Origin: Octopus sinensis
Taxonomy: Eukaryota
NCBI RefSeq assembly: GCF_006345805.1
Contig: NW_021833068.1
Span: 25,618 to 89,617, forward strand
DNA: 64,000 nt
Reading direction: 5' to 3'
Position 1 is the first letter of the stretch. Every line of letters begins with the position of its first letter. Shown here piece after piece: positions 10,276 through 39,835 of the stretch. Both the position numbers and the translations under genes were made by a program. Below the pieces are notes generated by a model. That model did not search any database, was not told where the DNA came from, and saw only the letters and a program-made list of their open reading frames with translations.

Positions 10276-10432
10276 CTGTAAATTGTTATTTTCTTTGCTA
10301 TTTAACAGGACTTTGACTACATCTTCATAGTTATTCCCCACAGCCCAATGTAGAGGTGTGTTGCCAAATGAGTCCTGCTTATTAACATTTGCTCCACTGG
10401 AGACTAAGAAGGCCACAACATCAGTTTTGTGG
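10276..10432 (-). CDS. Ankyrin exon B1: HKTDVVAFLVSSGANVNKQDSFGNTPLHWAVGNNYEDVVKVLLNSKENNNLQ
   Basis: ttttcttcctttcag acceptor and gtcagc donor. 157 nt, phase 2 to 0. Confidence 0.9.
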
Positions 10433-11460
10433 CTGAAAGGAAGAAAAACAAACATAAAACATCACATTCACTTAATAATTACATTAAATATACACTCGTG
10501 TTCCATTAAATGCATAAAAACCTATGTATACTACAGCCTCGTGTGTGTATATATATAAATATATATGCAAATATGTATGTATGTAGAGGCAAACCTACAC
10601 AAATGTGCCCCAGGCGAATGTTTCCTTGTAACTTCTAGAAAAATGGATGTTTTTCAATGAATTTTCTTTCACAAATATCCTTCAGATGGCAAATATTCCA
10701 ATTATATCGGAATTTGTTGTGAGAAAAAACTTTTCGGTGGGTGGAGAGAGAAATTTAGTAAAGTTCAACCGAGTCGGCTTTCTTTCCAAAAAAATAGATA
10801 TTTTCAAATGAAATTTTCAATAAAACCGTTTCAGATGGTGAAGATTTCGATTATATCGGAATTTAATATGAAGAAAATTATAAAAGTTGGTGGATTCGCA
10901 CAGATATACACTAACACAAAACAGAAAATAAGAAGATGAACTTTGGGAAAATAACCGTGATGTGTGTCAGTATGTATGTGTGCGAAACCATAAAATTTTT
11001 AAAGTTTTTTCATGTTAAATTCCGATATAATCCTAATCTACACCATTTGAAAGGGATTTGTAGAAATTTTCACAGAAACAAAATATCCACTTTTCTGAAA
11101 GTTATAGAAAAACAAAACGGATTTGGGTGAATTTTGAGAAAGTCAACTCCTCAACGTTTGTTGAAAATTTGTTTTTACAACAATTCCGATATAATTGGAA
11201 TCTTCATCATCTGAAGCATTTTTGTCAAAGAAATTTCATTAAAAAATATCCATTTGTCTCAAAGTTATAAGGAAACAAATTCGTCGTGGGGCCCAGTTGT
11301 GTACGTATGCCTATACATATGCACGCATATATATATTTATATGATCTCGAGTATCGAGTACCTACGTCTGGCTAGCGCGCACGCGCGAATCCGCGTGTGC
11401 GCGACCGGGACCACTCTGCGATAATGTCAAAGTCAATAATATTATACAGGTGTATATGTG

Positions 11461-11491
<31 letters not shown>

Positions 11492-12157
11492 GCATGTATG
11501 TGTATGTATGTATATATATATGTATGTATATAGAGAGACAGACAGACAGAGAAATATGAGCCACTGAAATACGTATAATCGTTAATACACAGTAAACAAA
11601 TGTGTACGTGGGTACTTGTCTATTGTCGTGGTCCCGGTTACGCACGCGCGAATTCGCGCCAGACGTAGGTGCCTGTCGTGGGATGAGGTTCGATATCAAC
11701 TTCGCTTGCCTCAACAGGTCTTTGTGTATAAATGTATAAATTTTTCGCACTAAATTCTTTCCGTAGAATTTATCAAAAAACGCGCAAAATTATTCCGTAG
11801 AATTTATCAAATTAAAAAACGCAAAATTAATATATTTTTTGAAATTGCAAATTATTTAGAATATAAAACAAATGAAGTTAAATTTTAAAAATAAATGTCA
11901 TATACTTATACTCTGTAAGGTGCTGTGTTCACACTTCAATTTACTATTTTCTAGAAATGTTGCCTTTCTAATTGAAACAATTTTCTCAATCTCCATTTAA
12001 AAGTCCATAATGCCTCTTGAGCCATATCAAAATGAACAATTTGAATACGCGGCGGCGGTGGTGGTGGTGGTGGTTGTGTGAGGTTCTAATTTTTTCTGAT
12101 CTCTCTTTGCCCCCCTAGATGGAGTTGTGGTGGGGAGACAGATGAAAGATGTTTCAT

Positions 12158-12196
<39 letters not shown>

Positions 12197-12859
12197 CCTA
12201 CACGATATAGTCTATAAATTTGGGAGTTTTTGAAAGATATATATTTTGTCATCAGATATATATACTTTCTCACACTACAATTAAGATATATTTATTTTAA
12301 ATCGTTCATCTTTTCCCGCGACAACAAAAATTGGGCGCGAAAATTTTTCTAAATATTAGCGGAATGAACAACTGAGATAAAGAGGGGGCAAAGAGAGATC
12401 AGAAAAAAAAATTAGAACCTCACACCACCACCACCACCGCCGCCGCCGCGTAATTCAAAGTTGTTCATTTTGATATGGCTCAAGAGGCATTATGGACTTT
12501 TAAATGGAGATTGAGAAAAATTGTTTCAATTAGAAAGGCAACATTTCTAGAAAATAGTAAATTGAAGTGTGAACACAGCACCTTACAGAGTATAAGTATA
12601 TGACATTTATTTTTAAAATTTAACTTCATTTGTTTTATATTCTAAATAATTTGCAATTTCAAAAAATATATTAATTTTGCGTTTTTTAATTTGATAAATT
12701 CTACGGAATAATTTTGCGCGTTTTTTGATAAATTCTACGGAAAGAATTTAGTGCGAAAAATTTATACATTTATACACAAAGACCTGTTGAGGCAAGCGAA
12801 GTTGATATCGAACCTCATCCCACGACAGGCACCCACGCCAACCCCCTTTGCTTGCGAAG

Positions 12860-13200
12860 ACATGTTGGGGCAAGTGTGGCACCCGGCAAATGCCAGGACC
12901 CCTGGACTGGTGGTACGTAAAAAGCACTATCCGAATCGTGGCCGATGCCAGAGCCGCCTCGACTGGCACCAATCCGACCGTGGCCGTTGCCAGCCTCTCC
13001 TGGCACCTGTGCGGGTGGCATGTAAAAAGCACCCACTACACTCTCGGAGAGTGGTTGGCGTAGGTTAGGAAGGGATCCAGTTGTAGAAACATTGCCAGAT
13101 AAGACTGGAGTCTGGTGCAGCCTTCTGGCTTCCCAGATCCCCGGTCGAACCGTCCAACCATGCTGGCTGGAGAACGGACGTTAAACGATGATGATGATGA
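12860..13200 (+). mobile_element. 5'-truncated RTE 3' UTR copy with (GAT)n tail
   Basis: Shares ccgaccgtggccgttgccagcctc/tggcacctgtg motifs and the tail with 53793-54150 in the opposite orientation. Confidence 0.7.
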
Positions 13201-13244
13201 GAAGAAATTAATTCATTAAGTTTACAAATTAATACTCTTACTCT

Positions 13245-15826: not shown

Positions 15827-16088
15827 TTTTGAACTGCCAGATGGAGAGGGGTGTCACCCTCTTCGTCCACCTTATTGGATTGATGCCATTTTGTTGCTGG
15901 AGAAAATCAACAACAACTTCCTTGTGTCGATGAGCAGAGGCAAGTTGTTGTAGAGGGGTGGAACCTTGCTTGGTCTCAGCTTTAACATCCGTGCCATTCT
16001 GTTGCAGGAGAAGTTCAACAACGTCCTTGCTTCCATAGCGACAGGCAAAATGGAGAGCTGTCCAGCCCAATTCATTTTGCTGATTAAC
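15827..16088 (-). CDS. Ankyrin exon A2 (short type), frameshifted as assembled
   Basis: Splice sites are intact. It is 262 nt versus 257 nt in A4: two 3-nt slippage duplications and a 1-nt deletion. Confidence 0.7.
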
Positions 16089-16825
16089 CTAAATAAGATA
16101 AACAATAAAGACATTAAAGATGGTGTTTATTGGGAGAAGAAGGAAAAAAATGAAAAATGTCAGAAAAACAGAATCAGATTAATTTAAACAGGTGGAATGA
16201 AGGTTGGGGAAAATAAATGAGATTTATAATGTATCTATACACACACACATATGTGTATGCATATATATATATATACACTCTCGCACATACATATATACAT
16301 ACGTGTTTTATATCTTCACGGATCATTTTTTTATGCATTTTTATGTATATATGCGTTTATGTGTGTGTATATTTGTGTATGTATGTACAGGTCTGTGTGA
16401 GCTGAAGAAAGTTTTTAATTAAAAAAATATAAACTGTTTCGAGAAACTGGCGAACAAATAATTTCAGTTTTGTGAGACCAACTCCGAAAGATCACCCGTT
16501 TTTTTCCAATGAAATTTAACAGAAATCCACCCTTTTCAATGTTGTAGCAGCAAGAATTATGTGTGGATTGTGGGAAAGAAAGTGGAAAAGTGTGTGTTGA
16601 GGGTGGAAGGGTATTGATCTGCAACTCATCAAAGATATTTCATTACCATAATCATTATCTATAAACAAGGAAATGAGCAACTTTTATTTAAAAAATTAAA
16701 TCGTCAATAATGAAGAAACAGATTTGGGGCACTAAACTGTATGTATACATCATATACATAAAACACAAACCAACATACATAACTTTATACACACACACAC
16801 ACATATATATAATATATTCGCTGAC

Positions 16826-16980
16826 CTGTAAATTGTTATTTTCTTTGCTATTAACAGGACTTTGACTACATCTTCATATTATTCTTCACAGCCAGATGTA
16901 GAGGTGTGTTGCCCCCTGAGTCCTGCTTATTAACATTTCCTCCACTGGAGACTAAGAAGGCCACAACATCAATTTTGTGC
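16826..16980 (-). CDS. Ankyrin exon B2, frameshifted as assembled
   Basis: 155 nt versus 157 nt. Two single-T losses in T-runs relative to B4, otherwise matching B4. Confidence 0.7.
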
Positions 16981-18074: not shown

Positions 18075-18113
<39 letters not shown>

Positions 18114-18121
18114 TATATATA

Positions 18122-21100
18122 GGAAGTAGAACTAAAAGGAAGTAGAACTAAAAGAAGGACTGGAAGAGCTAAAGGAAAAGAAAAAGCTCAAGCAGGACCA
18201 AAGAGTGAAAACAACAGAAATAGAAGTGGATCCGCAAAGGATGGAACCAAACAGCGCACACGGGTGTGTATGTTCTACCTGAGAGGTTCCTGCTGGCATG
18301 GAAAGGAAGGTGCAGGCTGCCGCTTTGCACATCGGGGACCTCGCCACAGAGACACGAGGCAGATGGACAAACCATCAACACAAAGAAAAGGGATGGACCA
18401 CGCACCACCTGCCCCAAAGCGGAGGGGTACGCATGTTGTGCGCGCCACAAAACAGCCAACATGATGTTGTCGAAAGAGCAGCTGCTGAGCAACAATCATT
18501 TTTGTGCATGGCACAAAAGATTGTACAGCAGCTGACCTGGCTTCATCAAACCCAAGCCCGCAGGTGGGACTACCCACTATATACCAGACCACCACAGCAA
18601 ACAGACACAGGATGGACACCGCCGGCAACAACGTACACCTCACCTCGATACTCCCACTGAACATCAGAGGACTGCAAACACTCAGTAACAGGACAAAGAT
18701 CCCGTTCCTGAGAGACTTTGTTGCATGCAATCAAGCCTTATGCATAGCACTTACAGAAACGCACCTGAAACCGGACATAGCAGATGCGGAGTTACACATA
18801 CCACAGTATGCTGTACTACGGACCGACAGGAAAGAAAGGAGTCATGGAGGTGTTGCTATGTACATCCGTGAGGACCTCACACCCCAGGTCCTCTTGTCAT
18901 ACTCAAACTCGGTGTGTGACACACTAATTGACACACTATTAGGCAACTTGATGTAGTTGTGTGTGCTACATATCGCCCTCCAGATGCCCCAAGCCATGTG
19001 GGCAAGTTTGAAGACTGCCTTATAAAAATAGAAGAAATTCTAACCACATTAGAACAACACATAGGTGTGCTTCTTATGGGAGACTTCAATCTGCCCAATG
19101 TCAGATGGCCCGAGGGCCTTTCTCTCCCAGGAATGACAAGTTGTGAACGAGGACAGGCGAGGTCCCTCCTGAACCTCATCAACACCCTGTACATGGAGCA
19201 GGTAATACTCCAACCAACCAGGGCAGGTAACACACTGGATCTCTGCTTCACAAATGACATGGATCTCATCCATAATGTGAAAGTGACACCGACAATACTC
19301 TCGGATCACAACATGATAGAGCTGACCATGTACGGGCCAAAAGAGAGCACGGACATGCAGCCTACAAGAAACCCTCAAAATCTTTCCAGCTTGAACTACC
19401 ATAAGGCAAACTGGAAACAAATTGAGAAAGAGATCCTCAAACAAAACTGGCCTGAATGTCTCTCCTCGCCAGACATCGACATGAAACTTCAACAATTCAT
19501 GTCTGTAATGCAAGCCATATGCTACAAATGTGTCCCAGAGAGAAAGGCCACTGTACACAAGAACAAAATCCCCAGAGAGAGGAAAATTTTAATGAGACGG
19601 CGTACGAAATTTTCAAATCGCCTAAACAAAACAGATTGAAAGCATGAAAAAGTCCCGCCTAAAAATAAAACTGTTGGAAATCGAAAAATGTCTGCAACTC
19701 TCCCATGAAAAAGAAAGAGCGACAAAGAAGCCTGGGCTATAGAAAACACATAAATCTAACCCAGAGCTTTCTACAGGTATGCCAAAGAAACAGCTACAGT
19801 GCACTGTAGAATAGGGCCACTCCGCGAAAAGGATGGCACACTTACAGGAAAACCAATGAGGGTAAGTGAAATACTGAATGAGCAATTCAAGAGTGTTTTC
19901 ACTCCACCCCTTGGGCATCTCCAAATCACAAATCCAACTGACTTTTTTACCACTGCAGATATAAAATCAGAGGCGGCGACGATAGATTACATCGATATAA
20001 AGGAAGACGATGTAACCAAGGCTATAGATGAAATGAAAACAGACTCAGCTACTGGCCCCGATGGATTCCCGGCATCCTCCTAAAAGCATGTAAGAGAGTC
20101 CTAGCAAGACCACTGCAGTTCCTCTTTCAGAGCTTCCTTGCAGCTGGCAAACTTCCAGGAAACTGAAGGAAGGTAAAATATCCCATTCATAAAGGAGGTA
20201 GCAGAGCGGAAGCCAAGAACTATAGACCTATCTCTCTGACCTCACACATCAGCAAGGTCATGGAACGAATAGTCAGAAGGAAGCTGATCACCTTCCTTGA
20301 AGAAAATGACTTGCTGCCCGACACCCAACATGGTTTCCGACCAGGGAGAAGAAGCTGTTAAACTCAGCTCCTACAACACTATGACTGGGTGCTGAAACGG
20401 CTGCTCAACCACTCAAATGTGGAAGTGATATATCTCGATTTGCAAAGGCCTTTGATAAAGTCGATCATGGAATGATATGTCACAAACTGCGTGATCTCAA
20501 CATAGTTGGGAAAACTGGGAGAATGGCTTCATGACTTTCTGAAGGATAGAAGTCAGGTAGGTAGTAGCCAATGGGGCCACCTCCATTAACACACAAATAG
20601 TGAGCGGTGTTCCGCAGGGCACTGTTCTGGGACCACTACTGTTCATAATGGCCCTCTCAGAACCCTCAGCCACGCAGAGAGCCACGATCACAAGTTATGC
20701 AGATGATACAAAAGTTTCACAGGCAATACAGAACCCTGAGGACACTAAACACCTGCAATGTGAGCTAGACGAAATATAGAAGTGGGCTGAAAAGAATAGC
20801 ATGCAGTTCAATGCTGGAAAGTTTCAAGCTTTATACTATCAGCATGCAAAAACTGAATGCAATACCAATGAATACACTGGACCCGGAGGGATTGCAATCC
20901 CAGAGGCACAATCAGTGCGTGACCTGGGTATTCACATGAGTGATGACGCGACCTTTCATGTACATGTTGCTAAACTGGCAATGAAATGTAGACGGCTGGC
21001 TGGATGGATTCTTAGAACCTTTAGAAACAAGAGAACAAAAAAACCATGATGGTCCTCTGGAAGACACTTGTCCTAAGCCACTTTGACTATCGCTCTCAGC

Positions 21101-21695
21101 TATGGTCACCATCCAGTGTCAAGTTGATCACAGAACTTGAGGCGATCCAACGAAGCTACACAAAGAAGATAGCCTCTATGCAGAATGTAAGCTACTGGGA
21201 AAGACTCAAGAGATTAAAATTATATTCTCTGGAGCGTAGGCGGGAAAGATATGCCATAATATACATCTGGAAGATCCTGGAGGGAACTGTCCTGAACTTT
21301 GGCATCGAGAGTTACGCAAATGCCAGAACTGGGCGCCACTGCGTGGTGCCAAGGACTCCAAACCTGCCATCAAGATGTAGGACAAGATTCTGTGATAGCC
21401 TGGGCTTCCGAGGCCCACAGCTCTTCAATATCCTCCCGAAGAACCTGAGAGACCTGCATGGGGTGGATACAGATGTCTTTAAAATGAAGGGATCTCTTCC
21501 TGTCAGGTGTCCCAGATGAACCAACTTCACGGCAGGAGGGGCAGATGAGGGCAGCTGCATCGAACTCTCTCATGCACCAAATAGCAGTTGCTAGAAAGCC
21601 TCCATGAAGTGAACCAAGTAGCAACACCAAATGGCGGTGCCCCAGCATGGCCACAGCTCATGAGCTGAAATGGAATCAATCAATCAATCAATCAA
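18122..21695 (+). mobile_element. CR1-clade LINE copy 1 (5'-truncated; ORF1 tail, APE and RT), many indels
   Basis: LNIRGL, TETHL, GDFNLP and SDHN endonuclease motifs, RT segments matching copy 2, and an (ATCA)n tail. Inserted in a (TA)n tract. Confidence 0.92.
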
Positions 21696-22494: not shown

Positions 22495-22542
<48 letters not shown>

Positions 22543-22646: not shown

Positions 22647-23311
22647 TTTCGAACTGCCAGATGGAGAGGGGTGTCACCCTTGAGGTTCACCTTATTGACA
22701 TCCATGCCTTTCTGTTTCAGGAGAAAATCAACAACTTCCGTGCGTCCATGAGAAGAGGCAAGATGTAGAGGGGTGTAACCATGGTTGGTCACAGCATTAA
22801 CATCCGTGCCATTCTGTTGCAGGAGAAGTTCAACAACATCCTTGCTTCCATAGCGACAGGCAAGATGGAGAGCTGTCCAACCATGTTCCCTCACAGCCTT
22901 AACATCCGTGTCTTTATGTTGCAGGAGAAGTTCAACAACGTCCTTGCTTCTATAGCGACAGGCAAGATGGAGAGCTGTCGAACCATCTTCCATCACAGCC
23001 TTAACATCCGTGTCTTTATGTTGCAGGAGAAGTTCAACAACGTCCTTGCTTCCATAGCGACAGGCAAGATGGAGAGCTGTCCAACCATCTTCCATCACAG
23101 CCTTAACATCCGTGTCTTTATGTTGCAGGAGAAGTTCAACAACGTCCTTGCTTCCATAGCGACAGGCAAGATGGAGAGCTGTCGAACCATCTTCCATCAC
23201 AGCCTTAACATCCGTGTCTTTATGTTGCAGGAGAAGTTCCACAACGTCCTTGCTTCCATATTGACAGGCAACATGGAGAGCTGTTGCACTAAAATTATTT
23301 TTCTGATTAAC
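22647..23311 (-). CDS. Ankyrin exon A3 (665 nt = 257 + 4x102)
   Basis: Open frame with intact AG/GT, phase 0 to 2. Confidence 0.92.
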
Positions 23312-23766: not shown

Positions 23767-23923
23767 CTGTAAATTGTTATTTTCTTTGCTATTTAACAGG
23801 ACTTTGACTACATCTTCATAGTTATTCCACACAGCCAGATGTAGAGGTGTGTCGCCCCATGAGTCCTGCTTATTAACATTTGCTCCACTGGAGACTAAGA
23901 AGGCCACAGAATCCGTTCGGTGG
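23767..23923 (-). CDS. Ankyrin exon B3: HRTDSVAFLVSSGANVNKQDSWGDTPLHLAVWNNYEDVVKVLLNSKENNNLQ
   Basis: 157 nt, same splice contexts as B1. Confidence 0.9.
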
Positions 23924-26450: not shown

Positions 26451-26492
<42 letters not shown>

Positions 26493-27369: not shown

Positions 27370-27626
27370 TTTTGAACTGCCAGATGGAGAGGGGTGTCAC
27401 CCTCTTCGTCCACCTTATTGGCATTGATGCCATTCTGTTGCTGGAGAAAATCAACAACTTCCTTGTGTCGATGAGCAGAGGCAAGTTGTAGAGGGGTGGA
27501 ACCTTGCTTGGTCTCAGCTTTAACATCCGTGCCATTCTGTTGCAGGAGAAGTTCAACAACGTCCTTGCTTCCATAGCGACAGGCAAAATGGAGAGCTGTC
27601 CAGCCCAATTCATTTTGCTGATTAAC
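27370..27626 (-). CDS. Ankyrin exon A4 (short type, 257 nt)
   Basis: Open frame VNQQNELGWTALHFACRYG...GDTPLHLAVQ, phase 0 to 2. Confidence 0.9.
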
Positions 27627-28365: not shown

Positions 28366-28522
28366 CTGTAAATTGTTATTTTCTTTGCTATTTAACAGGA
28401 CTTTGACTACATCTTCATATTTATTCTTCACAGCCAGATGTAGAGGTGTGTTGCCCCCTGAGTCCTGCTTATTAACATTTCCTCCACTGGAGACTAAGAA
28501 GGCCACAACATCAATTTTGTGC
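28366..28522 (-). CDS. Ankyrin exon B4: HKIDVVAFLVSSGGNVNKQDSGGNTPLHLAVKNKYEDVVKVLLNSKENNNLQ
   Basis: 157 nt with intact splice sites. Confidence 0.9.
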
Positions 28523-29583
28523 CTGAAAGGAAGAAAAACAAACATGAAACATCACATTCACTTAATAATTACATCAAATATACACTCGTGTTCCATTAAA
28601 TGCATAAAAACCTATGTATACTACAGCCTCGTGTGTGTATATATAATTATATATGCAAATATGTATGTATGTAGAGGCAAACCTACACAAATGTGCCCCA
28701 GGCGAATGTTTCCTTGTAACTTCTAGAAAAATGGATGTTTTTCAATGAAATTTCTTTCACAAATATCATTCAAATGGCAAATATTCCAATTATATCGGAA
28801 TTTGTTGTGAGAAAAACCTTTTCGGTGGGTGGAGAGAGAAATTTAGGAAAGTTCACCCGAGTCGGCTTTCTTTCCAAAAAAATAGATATTTTCAATAAAA
28901 CCGTTTCAGATGGTGAAGATTTCGATTATATCGGAATTTAATATGAAGAAAATTATAAAAATTGGTGGATTCGCACAGATATACACTGACACAAAACAGA
29001 AAATAAAAAGATGAACTTTGGGAAAATAACCGTGATGTGTGTCAGTATGTATGTGTGCGAAACCATCAAATTTTTAAAGTTTTTTCATGTTAAATTCCGA
29101 TATAATCCTAATCTACACCATTTGAAAGGTGTATTAGGTGGAAAAATATTAGGTGGAAAAATATTAGGTGGAAAAAATCAACAGCATAATATAGTGAAAT
29201 AGCAACATAATAACAATAACAACAATAATAATACAGTACAATGCAAAACATTATAGATCAGCAAATACATATAAAATGAAAAATATTGATTGACATCATA
29301 GCAAAATCCAGAAGTGTACATGCATATAAAGGCATACAAGTCAGACTTTTGACGGTGATATATATTAAGTGGTAAGTTTAGAAATGATTTAAGATTGAAA
29401 GCTCAATAGGATTGACTGGAACATTTGAATTTCAATTGTCTCCGTTACGGTTGGTTTATTAAGATACACTTACATACATACACACGTATATATGCGCTTA
29501 TACATATATACATAGATAAACCAAAAAAACAGAAAATACAAGCTTACATACACACATACATACATAACTACGTACGTATAGAT

Positions 29584-29642
<59 letters not shown>

Positions 29643-29644
<2 letters not shown>

Positions 29645-32600
29645 AAGTAGAACTAAAAGAAGGACTGGAAGAGCTAAAGGAAAAGAAAAAGCTCAAGCAG
29701 GACCAAAGAGTGAAACAACCAGAAATAGAAGTGGATCCGCAAAGGATGGAACCAAACAGCGCACACGGGTGTGTATGTTCTACCTGAGAGGTTCCTGCTG
29801 GCATGGAAAGGAAGGTGCAGGCTGCCGCTTTGCACATCGGGGACCTTGCCACAGAGACACGAGGCAGATGGACAAACCATCAACACAAAGAAAAGGGATG
29901 GACCACGCACCACCTGCCCCAAAGCGGAGGTACGCAGATGTTGTGCGCGCCACAAACAGCCAACATGATGTTGTCGAAAGAGCAGCTGCTGAGCAACAAT
30001 CTTTTTTGTGCATGGCACAAAAGATTGTACAGCAGCTGACCTGGCTTCATCAAACCCAAGCCCGCAGGTGGGACTACCCACTATATACCAGACCACCACA
30101 GCAAACAGACACAGGATGGACACCGCCGTCAACAACGTACACCTCACCTCGATACTCCTACTGAACATCAGAGGACTGCAAACACTCAGTAACAGGACAA
30201 AGATCCCGTTCCTGAGAGACTTTGTTGCATGCAATCAAGCCTTATGCATAGCACTTACAGAAACGCACCTGAAACCGGACATAGCAGATGCGGAGTTACA
30301 CATACCACAGTATGCTGTACTACGGACCGACAGGAAAGAAAGGAGTCATGGAGGTGTTGCTATGTACATCCGTGAGGACCTCACACCCCAGGTCCTCTTG
30401 TCATACTCAAACTCGGTGTGTGACACACTAATTGTACATATTAGGCAACTTGATGTAGTTGTGTGTGCTACATATCGCCCTCCAGATGCCCCAAGCCATG
30501 TGGGCAAGTTTGAAGACTGCCTTATAAAAATAGAAGAAATTCTAACCACATTAGAACAACACATAGGTGTGCTTCTTATGGGAGACTTCAATCTGCCCAA
30601 TGTCAGATGGCCCGAGGGCCTTTCTCTCCCAGGAATGACAAGTTGTGAACGAGGACAGGCGAGGTCCCTCCTGAACCTCATCAACACCCTGTACATGGAG
30701 CAGGTAATACTCCAACCAACCAGGGCAGGTAACACACTGGATCTCTGCTTCACAAATGACATGGATCTCATCCATAATGTGAAAGTGACACCGACAATAC
30801 TCTCGGATCACAACATGATAGAGCTGACCATGTACGGGCCAAAAGAGAGCACGGACATGCAGCCTACAAGAAACCCTCAAAATCTTTCCAGCTTGAACTA
30901 CCATAAGGCAAACTGGAAACAAATTGAGAAAGAGATCCTCAAACAAAACTGGCCTGAATGTCTCTCCTCGCCAGACATCGACATGAAACTTCAACAATTC
31001 ATGTCTGTAATGCAAGCCATATGCTACAAATGTGTCCCAGAGAGAAAGGCCACTGTACACAAGAACAAAATCCCCAGAGAGAGGAAAATTTTAATGAGAC
31101 GGCGTACGAAATTTTCAAATCGCCTAAACAAACAGATTGAAAGCAGTGAAAAGTCCCGCCTAAAAATAAAACTGTTGGAAATCGAAAAATGTCTGCAACT
31201 CTCCCATGAAAAAGAAAGAGCAGACAAAGAAGCCTGGGCTATAGAAAACATAAAATCTAACCCCAGAGCTTTCTACATGTATGCCAAAGAAACAGCTACG
31301 GTGCACTGTAGGATAGGGCCACTCCTTGAAAAGGATGGCACACTCACAGGAAAAACAATGAGGGTAAGTGAAATACTGAATGAGCAATTCAAGAGTGTTT
31401 TCACTCCACCCCTTGGGCATTTCCAAATCACCAATCCAACTGACTTTTTTACCACTGCAGATATAAAATCAGAGGCGGCGACGATAGATTACATCGATAT
31501 AAAGGAAGACGATGTAACCAAGGCTATAGATGAAATGAAAACAGACTCAGCTACTGGCCCCGATGGATTCCCGGCAATCCTCCTAAAAGCATGTAAGAGA
31601 GTCCTAGCAAGACCACTGCAGTTCCTCTTTCAGAGCTTCCTTGCAGCTGGCAAACTTCCAGGAAAACTGAAGGAAGGAAGGTAAAATATGCCCCATTCAT
31701 AAAGGAGGTAGCAGAGCGGAAGCCAAGAACTATAGACCTATCTCTCTGACCTCACACATCAGCAAGGTCATGGAACGAATAGTCAGAAGGAAGCTGATCA
31801 CCTTCCTTGAAGAAAATACTTGCTGCCCGACACCCAACATGGTTTCCGACCAGGGAGAAGCTGTTTAACTCAGCTCCTACAACACTATGACTGGGTGCTG
31901 AAACGGCTGCTCAACCACTCAAATGTGGAAGTGATATATCTCGACTTTGCAAAGGCCTTTGATAAAGTCGATCATGGAATGATATGTCACAAACTGCGTG
32001 ATCTCAACATAGTTGGAAAACTGGGAGAATGGCTTCATGACTTTCTGAAGGATAGAAGTCAGGTGGTAGTAGCCAATGGGGCCACCTCCATTAACACACA
32101 AATAGTGAGCGGTGTTCCGCAGGGCACTGTTCTGGGACCACTACTGTTCATAATGGCCCTCTCAGACATGCCCTCAGCCACGCAGAGAGCCACGATCACA
32201 AGTTATGCAGATGATACAAAAGTTTCACAGGCAATACAGAACCCTGAGGACACTAAACACCTGCAATGTGAGCTAGACGAAATATAGAAGTGGGCTGAAA
32301 AGAATAGCATGCAGTTCAATGCTGGAAAGTTTCAAGCTTTATACTATCAGCATGCAAAACTGAATGCAATACCCAATGAATACACTGGACCCGGAGGGAT
32401 TGCAATCCCAGAGGCACAATCAGTGCGTGACCTGGGTATTCACATGAGTGATGACGCGACCTTTCATGTACATGTTGCTAAACTGGCAATGAAATGTAGA
32501 CGGCTGGCTGGATGGATTCTTAGAACCTTTAGAACAAGAGAACAAAAAACCATGATGGTCCTCTGGAAGACACTTGTCCTAAGCCACTTTGACTATCGCT

Positions 32601-33204
32601 CTCAGCTATGGTCACCATCCAGTGTCAAGTTGATCACAGAACTTGAGGCGATCCAACGAAGCTACACAAAGAAGATAGCCTCTATGCAGAATGTAAGCTA
32701 CTGGGAAAGACTCAAGAGATTAAAATTATATTCTCTGGAGCGTAGGCGGGAAAGATATGCCATAATATACATCTGGAAGATCCTGGAGGGAACTGTCCTG
32801 AACTTTGGCATCGAGAGTTACGCAAATGCCAGAACTGGGCGCCACTGCGTGGTGCCAAGGACTCCAAACCTGCCATCAAGATGTAGGACAAGATTCTGTG
32901 ATAGCCTGGGCTTCCGAGGCCCACAGCTCTTCAATATCCTCCCGAAGAACCTGAGAGACCTGCATGGGGTGGATACAGATGTCTTTAAAATGAAGCTGGA
33001 TCTCTTCCTGTCAGGTGTCCCAGATGAACCAACTTCACGGCAGGAGGGGCAGATGAGGGCAGCTGCATCGAACTCTCTCATGCACCAAATAGCAGTTGCT
33101 AGAAAGCCTCCATGAAGTGAAACCAAGTAGCAACACCAAATGGCGGTGCCCCAGCATGGCCACAGCTCATGAGCTGAAACTGGAATCAATCAATCAATCA
33201 ATCA

Positions 33205-33205
<1 letters not shown>
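29643..33205 (+). mobile_element. CR1-clade LINE copy 2 (ORF1 tail with CCCH finger; ORF2 APE-RT, disrupted)
   Basis: ORFs 29769-30164, 30008-31684, 31820-32287 and 32309-33115. QHGFRPGRSC, YLDFAKAFDKVDH, GVPQGTVLGPLLF and YADDTK motifs. (ATCA)n tail. Confidence 0.95.
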
Positions 33206-33243
<38 letters not shown>

Positions 33244-34003
33244 AACAAATACATATACCCGAAAACAACCACGCACACATATATGTATATATATACATAC
33301 ACATACATACTGTTAACTAAAATAGTATTAAGAATCATTAAAATTAAGATAATATTAATTGTTAATACAACGAAAGGGGTTGGAAGGGTAATTCGTAATA
33401 TACAAAAAAGAGGGGCCTAAAAGGGTAGAAAAAGGTAAGGGTTAATAAAAGGCAAAGGTTGGGAAATATTGAGATAAAATTTATAAGAAGGGTATAAACT
33501 CAAAACCCAGATTTACCATAACCAGTGTAAAGAAGATGTAGGTTATTTGCATAAGATACATAATTAAAAATTACACCACATATTCCGTAAACAATCAGAA
33601 GACTAGGAAACCGTCCAGATATCAACACTTGTAAATTTTATCTGAATATTTTCCAACAGTAATCAGACACAAGAACAGGAGTAAAGAGGGGGGACAATCT
33701 ATTAAATGAACCCCTGGATATTACTGGTACAGATTTTGACCCCAGGAGTTGAACTTGGAACACAAACGGATCAAAGTAAGGGGATGATTCTGCATTTAGC
33801 CCAGGGCCAGAGGAAAGAGGAAAATTTCAAGAGAAGGTGGGGGGTGAGGTGTTTTACATGGAATGAAAGGAAGAAGGGAGAGGATTTGAACCTGTAACGT
33901 TGAGGTAACGAAGGATGAGATGAAGTAAAGAATCCAGTCAGGTAACAACAACAACAACAATAATTATGATGATTAATTAATGAAGTTAGATTACAGTGTC
34001 ATT

Positions 34004-34041
<38 letters not shown>

Positions 34042-34145
34042 GAAGCATGACGACCCATGGTGGGATTATGACATGAATGACTCGAAACAAGAAAACAAAG
34101 ATTAAAGAAACAGATTTGGATAATCCAAATCCATTGGGGACTTAC

Positions 34146-34911
34146 TTTTGAACTGCCAGATGGAGAGGGGTGTCACCCTTGAGGTTCACCTTATTGACAT
34201 CCATGCCTTTCTGTTTCAGGAGAAAATCAACAACTTCCGTGCGTCCATGAGAAGAGGCAAGATGTAGAGGGGTGTAACCATGGTTGGTCACAGCATTAAC
34301 ATCCGTGCCATTCTGTTGCAGGAGAAGTTCAACAACATCCTTGCTTCCATAGCGACAGGCAAGATGGAGAGCTGTCCAACCATTTTCCGTCACTGCTTTA
34401 ACATCGATGCCATTCTGTTGCAGGAGAAGTTCAACAACATCCTTGCTTCCATAGCGACAGGCAAGATGGAGAGCTGTCCAACCATGTTCCTCACAGCCTT
34501 AACATCCGTGTCTTTATGTTGCAGGAGAAGTTCAACAACGTCCTTGCTTCTATAGCGACAGGCAAGATGGAGAGCTGTCGAACCATCTTCCATCACAGCC
34601 TTAACATCCGTGTCTTTATGTTGCAGGAGAAGTTCAACAACGTCCTTGCTTCCATAGCGACAGGCAAGATGGAGAGCTGTCGAACCATCTTCCATCACAG
34701 CTTTAACATCCGTGTCTTTATGTTGCAGGAGAAGTTCAACAACGTCCTTGCTTCCATAGCGACAGGCAAGATGGAGAGCTGTCGAACCATCTTCCATCAC
34801 AGCCTTAACATCCGTGTCTTTATGTTGCAGGAGAAGTTCAACAACGTCCTTGCTTCCATATTGACAGGCAACATGGAGAGCTGTTGCACTAAAATTATTT
34901 TTCTGATTAAC
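34146..34911 (-). CDS. Ankyrin exon A5 (766 nt; expected 767 = 257 + 5x102), one-base frameshift as assembled
   Basis: Splice sites are intact. It reads gttcctcac near 34489 where A3 has gttccctcac, a loss of one C from a homopolymer. Confidence 0.8.
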
Positions 34912-35328
34912 CTAAAAAAGATAAACAATAAAGACATTAAAGATGGTGTTTATTGGGGGAAGAAGGAAAAAAATGAAAAATGTCAGAGAAACAGAATCAG
35001 ATAAATTTAAACAGGTGGAATGAAGGTTGGGGGAAAATAAATGAGATTTATAATGTATCTATACACACACACATATGTGTATGCATATATATATATATAT
35101 ACACTCTCGCACATACATATATACATAAATACCTATATATACATACGTGTTTTATATCTTCACGGATCATTTGTTTATGCATTTTTGTGTATATATGCGT
35201 TTATGTGTGTGTATATTTGTGTATGTATGTACAGGTCTGTGTGAGCTGAAGAAAAGTTTTTAATTAAAAACATATAAATATAAACTGTTTCATATACATA
35301 AAACACAAACCAACATACATATCATTAT

Positions 35329-35360
<32 letters not shown>

Positions 35361-35368
35361 TCGCTGAC

Positions 35369-35525
35369 CTGTAAATTGTTATTTTCTTTGCTATTTAACA
35401 GGACTTTGACTACATCTTCATAGTTATTCCACACAGCCAGATGTAGAGGTGTGTCGCCCCATGAGTCCTGCTTATTAACATTTGCTCCACTGGAGACTAA
35501 GAAGGCCACAGAATCCGTTCGGTGG
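35369..35525 (-). CDS. Ankyrin exon B5 (same peptide as B3)
   Basis: 157 nt with intact splice sites. Confidence 0.9.
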
Positions 35526-35632
35526 CTGAAAGGAAGAAAAACAAACATAAAACATCACATTCACTTAATAATTACATCAAATATACACTCGTGTTCCATT
35601 AAATGCATAAAAACCTATGTATACTACAGCCT

Positions 35633-35665
<33 letters not shown>

Positions 35666-36541
35666 GTGCAAATATGTATTATGTAAAGGCAAAACTACAC
35701 AATTGTGCCCCAGGCGAATGTTTCCTTGTAACTTCTAGAAAAATGGATGTTTTTCAATGAAATTTCTTTCACAAATATCCTTCAGATGGCAAATATTCCA
35801 ATTATATCGGAATTTGTTGTAAGAAAAACCTTTTCGGTGGGTGGAGAGAGAAATTTAGGAAAGTTCACCCGAGTCGGCTTTCTTTCCAAAAAAATAGATA
35901 TTTTCAAATGAAATTTTCAATAAAACCGTTTCGGATGGTGAAGATTTCGATTATATCGGAATTTAATATGAAGAAAATTATAAAAATTGGTGGATTCGCA
36001 CAGATATACACTGACACAAAACAGAAAATAAAAAGATGAACTTTGGGAAAATAACCGTGATGTGTGTCAGTATGTATGTGTGCGAAACTATCAAATTTTT
36101 AAAGTTTTTTCATGTTAAATTCCGATATAATCCTAATCTACACCATTTGAAAGGGATTTGTAGAAATTTTCACAGAAACAAAATATCCACTTTTCTGAAA
36201 GTTATAGAAAAACAAAACGGATTTGGGTGAATTTTGAGAAAGTCAACTCCTCAACGTTTGAAAATTTGTTTTTACAACAATTTCCGATATAATTGGAATC
36301 TTCATCATCTGAAGCATTTTTGTCAAAGAAATTTCATTAAAAAATATCAATTTGTCTCAAAGTTATAAGGAAACAAATTCGTCGTGGGGCCCAGTTGTGT
36401 ACGTATGCCTATACATATGCACGCATATATATATTTATAGGATCTCGAGTATCGAGTACCTACGTCTGGCTAGCGCGCACGCGCGAATCCGGGACCACTC
36501 TGCGATAATGTCAAAGTCAATAATATTATACAGGTGTATAT

Positions 36542-36628
<87 letters not shown>

Positions 36629-37186
36629 GCATGTATGTGTATGTATGTATATATATATGTATGTATATAGAGAGACAGACAGACAGAGAAATATGAGCCA
36701 CTGAAATACGTATAATCGTTAATACACAGTAGACAAATGTGTACGTGTGTGTATATCATATTAATAGGTGAGGGTATAAAGTATAAATATTTTTATCCCA
36801 GCGAGTGTACAATAGAAAACAAGGATTAAGTACCGTTGTTAGTATCTATATATTTGGTATACATTGAAAAATGTATTGTAATCCTTTTGCGAAAGATGGA
36901 ATGTCTGAAAATTATAGACAAACTAATTGATAGCAGATTTCTCATCAATCTAAAAAATCAACAACAACAGCAGCACGTCGTAATTGGCGGGAAAACTACG
37001 TCTGCAAATGTAATGTTGTCATAGCAACAGACTATGCAAGAGAAAGTTTGCTGTTAAGGGCAACGAGGCGTATTTTTACCGCCAAAAGAAACAGTTAAGT
37101 ATGGCGGTCATATAACACACATAAATGAATATATAAACACACAAATATTTATTATATATATGTGTGTGTGTATACATATATATATT

Positions 37187-37219
<33 letters not shown>

Positions 37220-38976
37220 ATATGTTAAACTCCAGTGTTTGACTCGAGCAAAAAAAAATTGTGCAATAGGTGTAAAATAAAATGTATTAAACAAATATGT
37301 AAAAAAAAAATACACTCTGGCGAACGAGGGGCGGTGGAGACGACTCGGAAAATTCACACGATCAATCTCACAGGATCCGAAAACTACATGTTTTATACCT
37401 GTTACACTTTTTGTTTTCATTTTTGGGACCGGTTGTCGAGTGGGGTTACCGGATCGTGTGAATCATCCGAGTCCGCACCCCAGATATACACTGACACAAA
37501 ACAGAAAATAAAAAGATGAACTTTGGGAAAATAACCGTGATGTGTGTCAGTATGTATGTGTGCGAAACCATCAAATTTTTAAAGTTTTTTCATGTTAAAT
37601 TCCGATATAATCCTAATCTACACCATTTGAAAGGTGTATTAGGTGGAAAAAATATTAGGTGGAAAAAATCAACAGCATAATATAGTGAAATAGCAACATA
37701 ATAACAATAACAACAATAATAATACAGTACAATGCAAAACATTATAGATCAGCAAATACATATAAAATGAAAAATATTGATTGACATCAGCAAAATCCAG
37801 AAGTGTACATGCATATAAAGGCATACAAGTCAGACTTTTGACGGTGATATATATTAAGTGGTAAGTTTAGAAATGATTTAAGATTGAAAGCTCAATAGGA
37901 TTGACTGGAACATTTGAATTTCAATTGTCTCCGTTACGGTTGGTTTATTAAGATACACTTACATACATACACACGTATATGTGCGCTTATACATATATAC
38001 ATAGATAAACCAAAAAGACAGAAAATACAAGCTTACATACACACATACATACATAACTACGTACGTATAGATCCATATATATATATATATATATATAAAC
38101 AAATACATATACCCGAAAACAACCACGCACACATATATGTATATATATACATACACATACATACTGTTAACTAAAATAGTATTAAGAATCATTAAAATTA
38201 AGATAATATTAATTGTTAATACAACGAAAGGGGTTGGAAGGGTAATTCGTAATATACAAAAAAGAGGGGCCTAAAAGGGTAGAAAAAGGTAAGGGTTAAT
38301 AAAAGGCAAAGGTTGGGAAATATTGAGATAAAATTTATAAGAAGGGTATAAACTCAAAACCCAGATTTACCATAACCAGTGTAAAGAAGATGTAGGTTAT
38401 TTGCATAAGATACATAATTAAAAATTACACTACATATTCCGTAAACAATCAGAAGACTAGGAAACCGTCCAGATATCAACACTTGTAAATTTTATCTGAA
38501 TATTTTCCAACAGTAATCAGACACAAGAACAGGAGTAAAGAGGGGGGACAATCTATTAAATGAACCCCTGGATATTACTGGTACAGATTTTGACCCCGGG
38601 AGTTGAACTTGGAACACAAACGGATCAAAGTAAGGGGATGATTCTGCATTTAGCCCAAGGCCAGAGGAAAGAGGATAATTTCAAGAGAAGGTGGGGGATG
38701 AGGTGTTTTACATGGAATGAAAGGAAGAAGGGAGAGGATTTGAACCTGTAACGTTGAGGTAACGAAGGATGAGATGAAGTAAAGAATCCAGTCAGGTAAC
38801 ATCAACAACAATAATTATGAGGATTAATTAATGAAGTTAGATTAGTGTCATTAGAGTGTGAGAGAGAGAGGTGAAGCATGACGACCCATGGTGGGATTAT
38901 GACATGAATGACTCGAAACAAGAAAACAAACATTAAAGAAACAGATTTGGATAATCCAAATCCATTGGGGACTTAC

Positions 38977-39233
38977 TTTTGAACTGCCAGATGGAGAGGG
39001 GTGTCACCCTCTTCGTCCACCTTATTGGCATTGATGCCATTCTGTTGCTGGAGAAAATCAACAACTTCCTTGTGTCGATGAGCAGAGGCAAGTTGTAGAG
39101 GGGTGGAACCTTGCTTGGTCTCAGCTTTAACATCCGTGTCTTTATGTTTCAGGAGAAGTTCAACAACGTCCTTGCTTCCATAGCGACAGGCAAAATGGAG
39201 AGCTGTCCAGCCCAATTCATTTTGCTGATTAAC
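38977..39233 (-). CDS. Ankyrin exon A6 (short type, 257 nt; LLLKHKDTDV variant)
   Basis: Open frame, phase 0 to 2. Confidence 0.9.
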
Positions 39234-39678
39234 CTAAATAAGATAAACAATAAAGACATTAAAGATGGTGTTTATTGGGAGAAGAAGGAAAAAAATGAAA
39301 AATGTCAGAAAAACAGAATCAGATTAATTTAAACAGGTGGAATGAAGGTTGGGGGAAAATAAATGAGATTTATAATGTATCTATACACACACACATTTGT
39401 GTATGCATATATATATATATACACTCTCGCACATACATATATACATAAATACCTATATATACATACGTGTTTTATATCTTCACGGATCATTTGTTTATGC
39501 ATTTTTGTGTATATATGCGTTTATGTGTGTGTATATTTGTGTATGTATGTACAGGTCTGTGTGAGCTGAAGAAAAGTTTTTAATTAAAAACATATAAATA
39601 TAAACTGTTTCATATACATAAAACACAAACCAACATACATATCATTATACACACACATATATATATATATTCGCTGAC

Positions 39679-39835
39679 CTGTAAATTGTTATTTTCTTTG
39701 CTATTTAACAGGACTTTGACTACATCTTCATAGTTCTTCTTCACAGCCAGATGTAGAGGTGTGTTGCCCCCTGAGTCCTGCTTATTAACATTTGCTCCAC
39801 TGGAGACTAAGAAGGCCACAACATCAGTTTTGTGC
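39679..39835 (-). CDS. Ankyrin exon B6: HKTDVVAFLVSSGANVNKQDSGGNTPLHLAVKKNYEDVVKVLLNSKENNNLQ
   Basis: 157 nt with intact splice sites. First cassette in transcription order. Confidence 0.9.

What the first reader, a model, noticed from the sequence alone, without database searches (positions are those of the whole stretch)
10276..39835. Exon B copies diverge more than the adjacent intron, almost only by amino-acid changes at ankyrin contact positions
Seen (hand alignment): B1 and B3 differ at 11 of 157 nt. Ten of these fall in codons that change the amino acid (K>R, V>S, F>W, N>D, W>L, G>W) and one is synonymous (ACT/ACG). Yet the adjoining ~120 nt of intron (10433-10556 versus the block from 23924) is identical. 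B1 versus B4 and B4 versus B6 show only non-synonymous differences. The 3' ~55 nt encoding the outer helix (YEDVVKVLLNSKENNNLQ) is invariant in the intact copies. Variation clusters at QDS[F/W/G]G[N/D]TPLH[W/L]AV[G/W/K][N/K][N/K]. Established: the beta-turn and first-helix positions form the ankyrin target-binding face and largely coincide with the positions randomised in DARPin libraries. Inference: diversifying selection on a recognition surface coupled to an E3 RING, as expected for an intracellular pathogen-sensing or arms-race ubiquitin ligase. Counts are small and copies are not independent.
Basis: partly seen in the sequence, partly recalled or inferred. Interest (0 to 1): 0.87.

Follow-up and report, generated by a model that had tools for sequence, protein, structure and literature searches.

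The report
Hypervariable ankyrin exons in octopus ligase
An octopus gene for an ankyrin-repeat, RING-type ubiquitin ligase carries six tandem copies of a two-exon ankyrin module whose introns and framework codons are nearly identical, while a few codons on the ankyrin binding face differ far more than neutral change predicts, as in a family of rapidly diversifying recognition proteins.

Summary
B1 and B3 differ at 11 of 157 nt, 10 of them in amino-acid-changing codons. The 125 nt of intron upstream are identical and the last 54 nt of the exon never vary. That identical flank is a local extreme. Over about 800 clean intron columns the units differ by 1.3-2.9%, against 5.7-8.3% in exon B.

The excess holds when homologous B exons from O. 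vulgaris and O. sinensis are added (24/157 against 47/795 minimum changes, p=5e-4). Synonymous density roughly matches the intron (2 of ~34 synonymous sites). My own codon models give omega 2.5-3.7. M1a/M2a, M7/M8 and M8a/M8 tests give LRT 37-76 on three trees. The selected codons are 22, 29 and 32, which are ankyrin positions 3, 10 and 13 (beta-turn and inner helix).

The gene (minus strand) reads ANK, RING (zf-C3HC4_3), then a Death domain in its relatives. It belongs to a large family seen only in Octopus and is not a Mind bomb orthologue.

Caveats:
- Only four distinct B alleles exist (B3=B5, B2=B4).
- Three exons carry frameshifts, possibly assembly errors.
- The array is absent from the O. 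vulgaris reference.
- Short inter-paralogue gene conversion also occurs.
- An immune role is inferred, not shown.

The parts
47650..47733 (-). Exon E1: start codon, MDVDKIISKIQNGDFKDVKRFIKKNPDQ, phase-0 donor
   Evidence: Matches the N-termini of P0002, P0004 and P0005.
44039..44193 (-). Exon A0 (ankyrin, phase 0 to 2). Its first 22 codons differ at 16/66 nt from the O. vulgaris orthologue; the rest differs at 1/87.
39679..39835 (-). Exon B6 (157 nt, phase 2 to 0), 'even' type. Closest to the single B exon of the O. vulgaris orthologue (3 differences, all non-synonymous).
38977..39233 (-). Exon A6 (257 nt, 2.5 ankyrin repeats of 34 codons), intact
35369..35525 (-). Exon B5, identical to B3
34146..34911 (-). 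Exon A5 (766 nt, 7.5 repeats) with a 1-nt deletion in a GGG run (frameshift)
29568..33115 (+). LINE-type retroelement (endonuclease and RT ORFs) between modules 5 and 4, antisense to the gene. It is part of the 11.5-kb super-unit.
   Evidence: Exo_endo_phos_2, 46.7 bits.
28366..28522 (-). Exon B4, 'even' type
27370..27626 (-). Exon A4 (257 nt), intact
23767..23923 (-). Exon B3, 'odd' type (HRTDSV...SWGD...LAVW)
22647..23311 (-). Exon A3 (665 nt, 6.5 repeats; internal repeats about 90% identical), intact
18123..21519 (+). Second, more degraded copy of the same LINE between modules 3 and 2
16825..16979 (-). Exon B2: same as B4 but with two 1-nt deletions in A-runs (frameshifts)
15827..16088 (-). 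Exon A2 (262 nt): two 3-nt insertions and one 1-nt deletion relative to A4 (frameshift)
10276..10432 (-). Exon B1, 'odd' type (HKTDVV...SFGN...WAVG)
9259..9821 (-). Exon A1 (563 nt, 5.5 repeats), intact
7261..7297 (-). Short exon C ((K)QHYDVVASMLAQ, phase 2 to 0) that links the last A exon in frame to exon X
4334..4543 (-). Exon X (ankyrin-like, DSVKLDIENDDKRTPLLEAV...)
2088..2263 (-). Exon Y (CCRELQLDKDRRLSEIVVLSYLASHGASLYHRNDEKVTPLD...)
953..1095 (-). RING exon (zf-C3HC4_3). It has 8 nt differences from the O. vulgaris orthologue, 7 in amino-acid-changing codons, and its peptide matches paralogue P0021 at 47 of 48 residues (I/K). The linker and Death-domain exons of relatives would lie beyond window position 1.

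Best explanation
The region is the ankyrin part of one minus-strand Octopus gene. Its exon order is E1, A0, six [B exon + A exon] modules, C, X, Y and RING. In its relatives a repeat linker and a C-terminal Death domain follow.

Shown:
- The six modules are a recent intragenic tandem amplification, arranged as three (even, odd) pairs. A LINE lies between successive pairs, in the intron that follows each odd module.
- Introns and framework codons are kept 97-99% alike by recent duplication and by recombination or gene conversion.
- A handful of exon-B codons on the concave ankyrin face (repeat positions 3, 5, 10, 13, 14) carry many non-synonymous, often two-nucleotide, differences.
- The same codons are hypervariable in B exons of paralogues and orthologues in three Octopus species, and in the 34-codon repeats of the A exons.

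Inferred:
- The best reading is concerted evolution of the scaffold with positive diversifying selection on the ligand-binding residues. New variants arise by point substitution and are also moved between family members by short (about 35-50 nt) gene-conversion patches.
- The variable ankyrin groove would choose the ligand, the RING would ubiquitinate it or signal through it, and the Death domain would couple to death-fold signalling.
- Every B+A module is a multiple of 3 nt, so modules can be spliced in series or skipped without breaking the frame.
For: Anatomy and splice phases.

Domains: Pfam Ank and zf-C3HC4_3 in the window model. Death domain (63.8 bits) in the syntenic O. vulgaris protein P0001.

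Array structure and mosaic units.

Exon against intron:
- 7 close copies: 24/157 against 47/795 minimum changes, p=4.8e-4.
- All 24 changes lie in the first 103 nt (p=9e-7); none lie in the last 54 nt.
- Pairwise exon/intron ratios are 2-5.
- Window copies only: p=0.002.

Codon models:
- M0 omega 2.47 (LRT 5.6, p=0.018).
- M1a/M2a LRT 49.4, M7/M8 49.3, M8a/M8 49.1.
- About 6% of sites have omega about 31: codons 22 and 32 (P=1.0) and codon 29 (P=0.84-0.87).
- Star tree LRT 76. Close set of 7: LRT 37, omega 3.7.

Event-count control: counting each new amino acid as one event, codon 22 has 5 and codon 32 has 6, against 0.41 expected (Bonferroni P 0.004 and 0.00025).

Fourteen B peptides: highest entropy at ankyrin positions 13, 3, 5, 10, 14 and 1.

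A repeats: non-synonymous states sit at positions 31-33a, 1-5, 10, 13-16 and 25-28. Only synonymous changes occur at 6-9, 11-12 and 17-24.

AlphaFold model of P0021: the variable codons lie in the loop before helix 1, in helix 1 and at its end. The invariant part is helix 2.

Family: 66 clusters at E<1e-30. All 10 sampled are Octopus.
Against: - There are only four distinct B alleles in the window and nine B exons in all, so tests rest on 52 codons.
- Many changes are two-nucleotide changes within a codon. Recombination is evident (unit 6 mosaic; A0 and RING patches). Both can inflate site-model tests.
- Some variants (CGA Arg, TGG-GGC-GAC, TGG at position 10, ATT Ile) are shared with paralogues, so they are not independent events.
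- Whole-exon pairwise pN/pS is only 1-3.
- Three of the 12 array exons are frameshifted.
- The array is absent from the O. vulgaris reference locus.
- No reads, transcripts or population data were available.
- The codon models are my own implementation, not codeml or HyPhy.
Confidence: 0.62

Rival explanations
1. Neutral import. Exon-restricted short-tract gene conversion from diverged paralogues, whose introns are not homologous, raises exon divergence above intron divergence. No selection for diversity is needed.
For: In A0 the window and its O. vulgaris orthologue differ at 16/66 nt within otherwise identical sequence. The O. vulgaris patch equals paralogue L003 at 33/34 nt, including synonymous sites. 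The RING exon differs at 8 nt from the orthologue and its peptide matches paralogue P0021 at 47 of 48 residues. Several B variants are shared with paralogues.
Against: Across the 7 close B copies, 22 of the 24 minimum changes are non-synonymous and 2 synonymous. Synonymous density (about 0.06) equals the intron's. Codons between the variable ones stay identical to the close set and do not carry the differences that mark distant paralogues L003 and L004. An 11-mer donor search in about 290 kb of family loci found no donor for the B3 patches and one 14-nt match for B1's LHW. Conversion can only shuffle variation that already exists at these particular codons.
Confidence: 0.2
2. Relaxed constraint. 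The extra modules are redundant pseudo-exons of a recent amplification and are decaying freely.
For: B2, A2 and A5 carry frameshifts. The O. vulgaris reference and every paralogue examined has a single B exon.
Against: Decay gives omega near 1 spread evenly. Here the last 54 nt have no change (3.2 expected at the intron rate) and the changes concentrate in a few codons. All 12 acceptor and donor sites are intact. The super-units differ by 76 small indels against 97 substitutions, a ratio typical of polishing errors, so the frameshifts may be artefacts. The same codons vary in single-copy, annotated paralogues.
Confidence: 0.1
3. Assembly artefact. The array is over-expanded, or haplotypes were laid in tandem, so the 'copies' are partly alleles.
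For: Super-unit copies differ by 1.06% in substitutions, the same as the window against the O. vulgaris reference (1.07%). The indel load suggests a noisy assembly. The reference locus lacks the array.
Against: There are three (even, odd) pairs, more than two haplotypes can give. Units differ structurally: 2.5 to 7.5 A repeats, and a 260-nt intron insertion in units 2 and 4 only. Even if some copies were alleles, the hypervariable-codon pattern would remain and is seen in three independently assembled species.
Confidence: 0.08

Closest known systems
Highly internally conserved (HIC) ANK/TPR/WD repeat domains of fungal NOD-like receptors (HET-E/HET-D type; Dyrka et al. 2014, PMC4986451)
   Same: Tandem repeats are about 90% identical to each other. 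Repeat number varies. Concerted evolution is combined with positive diversifying selection at a few positions on the concave ankyrin face (inner helix and beta-hairpin). The genes belong to lineage-specific families attached to signalling or death-type domains (compared).
   Different: Here the host is an animal. No NACHT or NB-ARC domain is present; the effector side is a RING plus a Death domain. The repeats are split into an intron-containing two-exon module that has itself been amplified with a LINE. The cited paper reports HIC repeats as rare in metazoa (0.8%).
Designed ankyrin repeat proteins (DARPin libraries; Binz et al. 2003, from established knowledge)
   Same: A fixed framework carries variation at repeat positions 3, 5, 13 and 14. 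Four of the six most variable B positions are DARPin-randomised positions. DARPin chains are among the best sequence matches in the PDB.
   Different: This is natural, not designed. Positions 10 and 1 also vary, while DARPin positions 2 and 33 are not prominent in exon B. The repeat is 34 residues long in the A exons.
Mind bomb E3 ligases (MIB1/MIB2), the name NCBI gives many family members
   Same: Ankyrin repeats are followed by a C-terminal zf-C3HC4_3 RING.
   Different: There are no MIB/HERC2 or ZZ domains. There is a single RING. Relatives have a Death domain at the C-terminus. Members were found only in Octopus. It is not an orthologue.
Ankyrin plus Death-domain proteins (ankyrins, NF-kB p100/p105, ANKDD1; from established knowledge)
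   Same: An ankyrin solenoid is combined with a death-fold domain.
   Different: A RING and CPKSEEK-type linker repeats lie between them. The binding-face residues are hypervariable and the genes sit in tandem clusters.
Arrays of duplicated cassette exons (Dscam-type)
   Same: Tandemly duplicated, frame-preserving exon modules differ mainly at binding residues.
   Different: Nothing here shows mutually exclusive splicing. Serial inclusion is equally compatible with the phases.

Membership tests
Ankyrin repeat proteins (Pfam Ank, Ank_2) | 33-residue helix-turn-helix-loop repeats with the TPLH motif, scoring above the Pfam gathering threshold | tested here: met
   Ank_2 128.5 bits (cut-off 27.3) and Ank 112 bits on the minimal window model. 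The AlphaFold model shows paired helices.
RING E3 ligases, zf-C3HC4_3 type | C3HC4 zinc-ligand pattern above the Pfam threshold | tested here: met
   42.4 bits (cut-off 27) for window exon 953-1095. Ligase activity was not tested.
Mind bomb (MIB1/MIB2) | N-terminal MIB/HERC2 domains and a ZZ zinc finger ahead of the ankyrin repeats, with two or three C-terminal RINGs | tested here: not met
   Pfam scans of the window model, P0001 and P0021 list no MIB_HERC2 or ZZ hits and one RING. The protein starts 28 residues before the first ankyrin repeat.
Death-domain proteins | Death domain (PF00531) above threshold | not testable with these tools
   The exons would lie beyond window position 1. The syntenic O. 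vulgaris protein P0001 has Death at 63.8 bits (cut-off 22.6), and the domain is present in most family members. tblastn finds no Death-domain sequence inside the window.
Fungal-type HIC repeat receptors (NLR) | A central NACHT or NB-ARC nucleotide-binding domain | tested here: not met
   No such Pfam hit in the window model or its relatives.
Fungal-type HIC repeat receptors (NLR) | Repeats at least 85% identical over at least 100 residues | tested here: met
   The A3 and A5 102-nt repeat arrays show 92% matches in Tandem Repeats Finder; the repeat sequences are listed.
Fungal-type HIC repeat receptors (NLR) | Positive selection at concave-face positions, with repeat-number variation | tested here: met
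   Site models and position mapping. A exons hold 2.5 to 7.5 repeats. Module number differs from the O. vulgaris reference.
Alternatively spliced cassette-exon arrays | Modules that preserve the reading frame when skipped | tested here: met
   157+257=414, 157+563=720 and 157+665=822 nt are all multiples of 3. Phases are 2 to 0 for B and 0 to 2 for A.
Alternatively spliced cassette-exon arrays | Transcripts that use different modules | not testable with these tools
   No RNA data were available. NCBI lists up to 15 isoforms for family members, but these models were not verified.

The most novel reading that the evidence does not exclude
Octopuses have evolved a germline-encoded family of natural 'DARPin-like' intracellular receptors. 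A constant ankyrin scaffold carries hypervariable groove residues and is wired to a RING and a Death domain. Functionally this would parallel NLR or TRIM-type innate sensors. In this gene an intragenic array of exchangeable two-exon modules would add combinatorial diversity by copy-number variation, patch gene conversion and possibly alternative splicing.
Probability: 0.18. Interest if true: 0.85.

Novelty: new variant of a known kind. Interest (0 to 1): 0.62.

Why it matters
Cephalopods lack adaptive immunity and their innate recognition repertoire is poorly known. An Octopus-restricted, clustered family of dozens of genes may qualify as such a repertoire. It pairs a conserved ankyrin scaffold and rapidly diversifying binding-face residues with ubiquitin-ligase and death-fold signalling domains. 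That would make it a concrete candidate for a lineage-specific recognition system and a rare animal example of the 'conserved repeats with hypervariable positions' mode described for fungal NLRs. It also gives a natural data set on which ankyrin positions tolerate and exploit variation. Finally, the locus shows exon-module amplification, LINE insertion and patch gene conversion acting together.

Tried and rejected
Tools that failed or gave nothing:
- The first protein search with the whole 858-aa model timed out. Restricting the words to the non-ankyrin C-terminus worked.
- Locus look-ups for P0002, P0004, P0005, P0021 and P0028 found nothing on record.

My own errors, corrected:
- Early BLAST against 'L001' mixed two loci held in one file. 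I noticed this through a coordinate mismatch and redid it.
- The first 8-sequence flank alignment misaligned units 2 and 4 upstream of their homology limit and inflated intron divergence. I excluded those columns and the error-prone unit 2.

Ideas considered and rejected:
- A1 out of frame with exon X: resolved by finding the 37-nt exon C.
- An RNA-editing-like A>G signature as the source of the changes: the changes are of all types.
- Mind bomb orthology: no MIB/HERC2 or ZZ domain.
- DNA donors for the B-specific patches among other ankyrin repeats of the family: only one 14-nt match.

Literature: three of the four literature searches looked for this octopus family and found no description of it; the fourth supplied the fungal NLR comparison. 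One DARPin paper did not state the randomised positions, so those come from established knowledge (Binz et al. 2003).

Full report
**What is there**

The window is eukaryotic DNA with introns, microsatellites and LINEs. The feature lies on the minus strand. Six copies of a 157-nt exon ('B') were found at 10276-10432, 16825-16979, 23767-23923, 28366-28522, 35369-35525 and 39679-39835. Each is followed about 450 nt downstream by an 'A' exon built from 102-nt (34-codon) ankyrin repeats. The A exons are 563, 262, 665, 257, 766 and 257 nt long.

B starts in phase 2 and ends in phase 0. A starts in phase 0 and ends in phase 2. The modules can therefore be spliced in series, and each intact B+A pair is a multiple of 3 nt.

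Upstream lie a start exon (47733-47650) and a first ankyrin exon, A0 (44193-44039). Downstream lie a 37-nt exon C (7297-7261), exon X (4543-4334), exon Y (2263-2088) and a RING exon (1095-953). A minimal spliced model scores for Ank/Ank_2 and zf-C3HC4_3 in Pfam.

**Array architecture**

Self-comparison shows three (even, odd) unit pairs. A LINE (endonuclease and RT ORFs on the plus strand) lies between successive pairs. Region 14042-23284 matches 25561-34782 at 97.5%, and 22656-27973 matches 34257-39598 at 96.8%.

B3 is identical to B5. B2 equals B4 except for two 1-nt deletions. The window therefore holds four distinct B alleles. Unit 6 is a mosaic: its exons are of the even type, but its B-A intron lacks the 260-nt insertion of units 2 and 4. 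Recombination within the array is thus evident.

The two full super-units differ by 97 substitutions (1.06%) but also by 76 indel events. Of these, 56 are single-base and 31 lie in homopolymers. That ratio suggests imperfect polishing. The frameshifts in B2, A2 and A5 may therefore be artefacts.

**Check of the observation**

- B1 and B3 differ at 11/157 nt. Ten differences lie in codons that change the residue and one is ACT/ACG.
- B1 against B4 and B4 against B6 differ only in amino-acid-changing codons.
- The last 54 nt are invariant.
- The intron upstream of B1 and B3 is identical for 125 nt.

That identity is, however, a local extreme. Over about 800 gap-free, microsatellite-masked intron columns between the upstream flank and the A exon, B1/B3 units differ by 2.6%. 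All inter-type pairs differ by 1.4-2.9%, against 5.7-8.3% in exon B. Exon/intron ratios are 2-5, with pairwise Fisher p from 2e-4 to 0.07. Within the window alone, exon B has 19/157 minimum changes and the introns 40/812 (p=0.002).

Path-averaged Nei-Gojobori counts give 9 non-synonymous and 2 synonymous steps for B1 against B3, pN/pS 1.2. The 10:1 tally is therefore not significant on its own.

**Relatives**

A protein search seeded from the non-ankyrin C-terminus found only Octopus proteins. They carry assorted automatic names such as 'MIB2-like', 'ankyrin repeat protein RF_0381' and 'PP6 regulatory ankyrin repeat subunit B-like'. Their architecture is ANK, RING, CPKSEEK-type linker repeats and a Death domain. 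The Death domain scores 63.8 bits in P0001.

An exhaustive phmmer search of 1.84 billion representatives gave 66 clusters at E<1e-30. All ten that I looked up, down to E=8e-27, are O. sinensis, O. vulgaris or O. bimaculoides proteins. They lie on contigs of eight different lengths, so on several scaffolds.

None has MIB/HERC2 or ZZ domains, so the Mind bomb name is superficial. I found no paper describing this family.

**The orthologous locus**

O. vulgaris OX597842.1:28.16-28.23 Mb (L001) is collinear with both flanks of the array. Substitution divergence there is 1.07%, and most 150-nt windows show 0-1 differences. L001 has a single B exon. In place of modules 5 to 1 it has about 23.5 kb of other sequence, including relics of a RING and a Death domain, followed by a partial unit. 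Each of the other four family loci I fetched also has one B exon.

The six-module array is therefore specific to this assembly. It could be a copy-number variant, a species difference or an assembly problem. I could not decide which without reads.

**Selection tests**

I added the B exons of L001 (O. vulgaris) and L002 (O. sinensis), whose flanking introns are 97-98% identical to those of the window units.
- The seven close copies show 47 minimum changes in 795 intron columns (0.059 per site).
- They show 24 in the 157 exon columns (0.153 per site; p=4.8e-4).
- All 24 lie in the first 103 nt (p=9e-7); none lie in the last 54 nt.
- Two of the 24 are synonymous. This gives a synonymous density of about 0.06, equal to the intron's, and a non-synonymous density of about 0.18.

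I wrote a codon-model likelihood program (F3x4, all branch lengths optimised) and applied it to nine B exons.
- M0 omega is 2.47 (against omega=1: LRT 5.6, p=0.018).
- M1a/M2a LRT is 49.4, M7/M8 49.3 and M8a/M8 49.1.
- About 6% of codons have omega about 31.
- Codons 22 and 32 have posterior 1.0 and codon 29 has 0.84-0.87.
- The result survives a star tree (LRT 76) and restriction to the seven closest sequences (LRT 37, omega 3.7).

As a control against multi-nucleotide changes, I counted each new amino acid as one event. Codons 22 and 32 then have 5 and 6 events, against 0.41 expected from the synonymous density (Bonferroni P=0.004 and 0.00025).

**Where the variable codons lie**

In 14 B peptides from the family, the highest-entropy positions are ankyrin positions 13, 3, 5, 10, 14 and 1. 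Four of these six are positions randomised in DARPin libraries (hypergeometric P=0.005). The DARPin positions come from established knowledge (Binz et al. 2003).

An AlphaFold model of family member P0021 has pLDDT 87-94 over the B exon. It places codons 22 and 24 in the loop before helix 1, codon 29 in helix 1, and codons 32-34 at its end. The invariant 3' part forms helix 2, the outer helix.

The 14 distinct internal repeats of the A exons show the same rule. Amino-acid variation sits at positions 31-33a, 1-5, 10, 13-16 and 25-28. Positions 6-9, 11-12 and 17-24 carry only synonymous changes.

**Gene conversion is also at work**

Between the window and L001, exon A0 differs at 16 of its first 66 nt but at 1 of the remaining 87, inside flanks that are nearly identical. 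The L001 version of the patch equals paralogue L003 at 33/34 nt, including synonymous sites.

The RING exon differs at 8 nt (7 in amino-acid-changing codons) from L001, and its peptide matches paralogue P0021 at 47 of 48 residues. Short templated patches are therefore exchanged between family members, and some B variants are shared with paralogues.

For exon B itself, an 11-mer search of about 290 kb of family loci found no donor for the B3-specific patches. It found a single 14-nt match for B1's LHW motif. The codons between the variable ones do not carry the marks of distant paralogues. Conversion can redistribute variation and inflate tree-based tests. It does not explain why variation exists almost only at binding-face codons while synonymous and intron sites stay at about 6%.

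**Verdict**

The most likely explanation (confidence about 0.6) is concerted evolution of an ankyrin scaffold with positive diversifying selection on its binding face, in a member of an Octopus-specific ANK-RING-Death family. Point substitution and patch conversion supply the variants.

[quoted passage not shown] These show concerted evolution, repeat-number polymorphism and positive selection on the concave face (PMC4986451). The octopus genes lack the NOD domain and are not members of that family.

The rivals are neutral exon-limited conversion (0.2), decay of redundant pseudo-exons (0.1) and assembly artefact (0.08).

A role in pathogen sensing or another conflict is plausible from the architecture and the lineage-specific expansion. 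Nothing I could run bears on it.

Noticed in passing
window 44128-44193 (first 22 codons of exon A0) compared with L001 17005-17070: This patch differs at 16/66 nt from the O. vulgaris orthologue, while the rest of the exon (1/87) and the flanking introns are nearly identical. The O. vulgaris version matches paralogue L003 at 33/34 nt, so this is a short inter-paralogue gene-conversion tract over binding-face codons.
   Followed up: yes
window 953-1095 (RING exon) and 2088-2150 (3' half of exon Y): The RING exon has 8 differences from the O. vulgaris orthologue, 7 of them in amino-acid-changing codons, in a region otherwise about 0.5% diverged. The window's version matches another O. vulgaris paralogue (P0021) at 47 of 48 residues. 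Residues next to the zinc ligands change (CWWC/CRWC, CRHTICC/CQHTVIC).
   Followed up: partly
window 14042-23284 compared with 25561-34782: The two super-unit copies differ by 97 substitutions but 76 indel events, mostly single bases and often in homopolymers. This indel excess suggests polishing errors and casts doubt on the frameshifts in B2, A2 and A5.
   Followed up: partly
window 18123-21519 and 29568-33115 (+ strand): Two copies of a LINE-type element (endonuclease and RT ORFs) lie antisense within introns of the array and were duplicated with it. The second copy keeps a 563-aa ORF.
   Followed up: partly
window about 16450-16750 and 27990-28290 (B-A intron of units 2 and 4): A 260-nt insertion is present only in units 2 and 4. 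Its start is also seen in the O. sinensis paralogue L004, yet unit 6, which has 'even'-type exons, lacks it. The units are therefore recombinant mosaics.
   Followed up: partly
window 27370-27626 and 38977-39233 (A4, A6), second repeat: The 'even'-type A exons read TPLQ instead of the conserved TPLH motif. The histidine is replaced in both intact copies.
   Followed up: no
window 41175-42102: A tandem array of about 99 nt with 9 copies, rich in CA/CT dinucleotides, lies in the intron between A0 and B6. It is also present at the orthologous O. vulgaris position (L001 19144-21122).
   Followed up: no
window 54075-56206 and 56664-57923 (-): A GC-rich 370-nt tandem repeat (6 copies) sits next to a 419-aa reverse-transcriptase ORF with a PHD-like finger. 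This is another retroelement upstream of the gene. A further repeat of about 540 nt lies at 61795-64000.
   Followed up: partly
window 11664-12114 and 12384-12837: A 450-nt inverted repeat at 97.6% identity lies in the unique stretch between units 1 and 2.
   Followed up: no
P0007, P0019 and P0021 (O. sinensis and O. vulgaris gene models); window 35526-35549 and equivalents: Several annotated family proteins begin with MFVFLPFS. This is the translation of the polypyrimidine tract and acceptor of the intron just upstream of a B exon, so these models are probably truncated at their 5' ends (one starts at a contig end).
   Followed up: partly
L001 27919-33913: The O. vulgaris reference has relics of a second RING and Death domain between its B/A unit and the downstream partial unit. 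The annotated protein P0001 fuses two adjacent family genes.
   Followed up: partly
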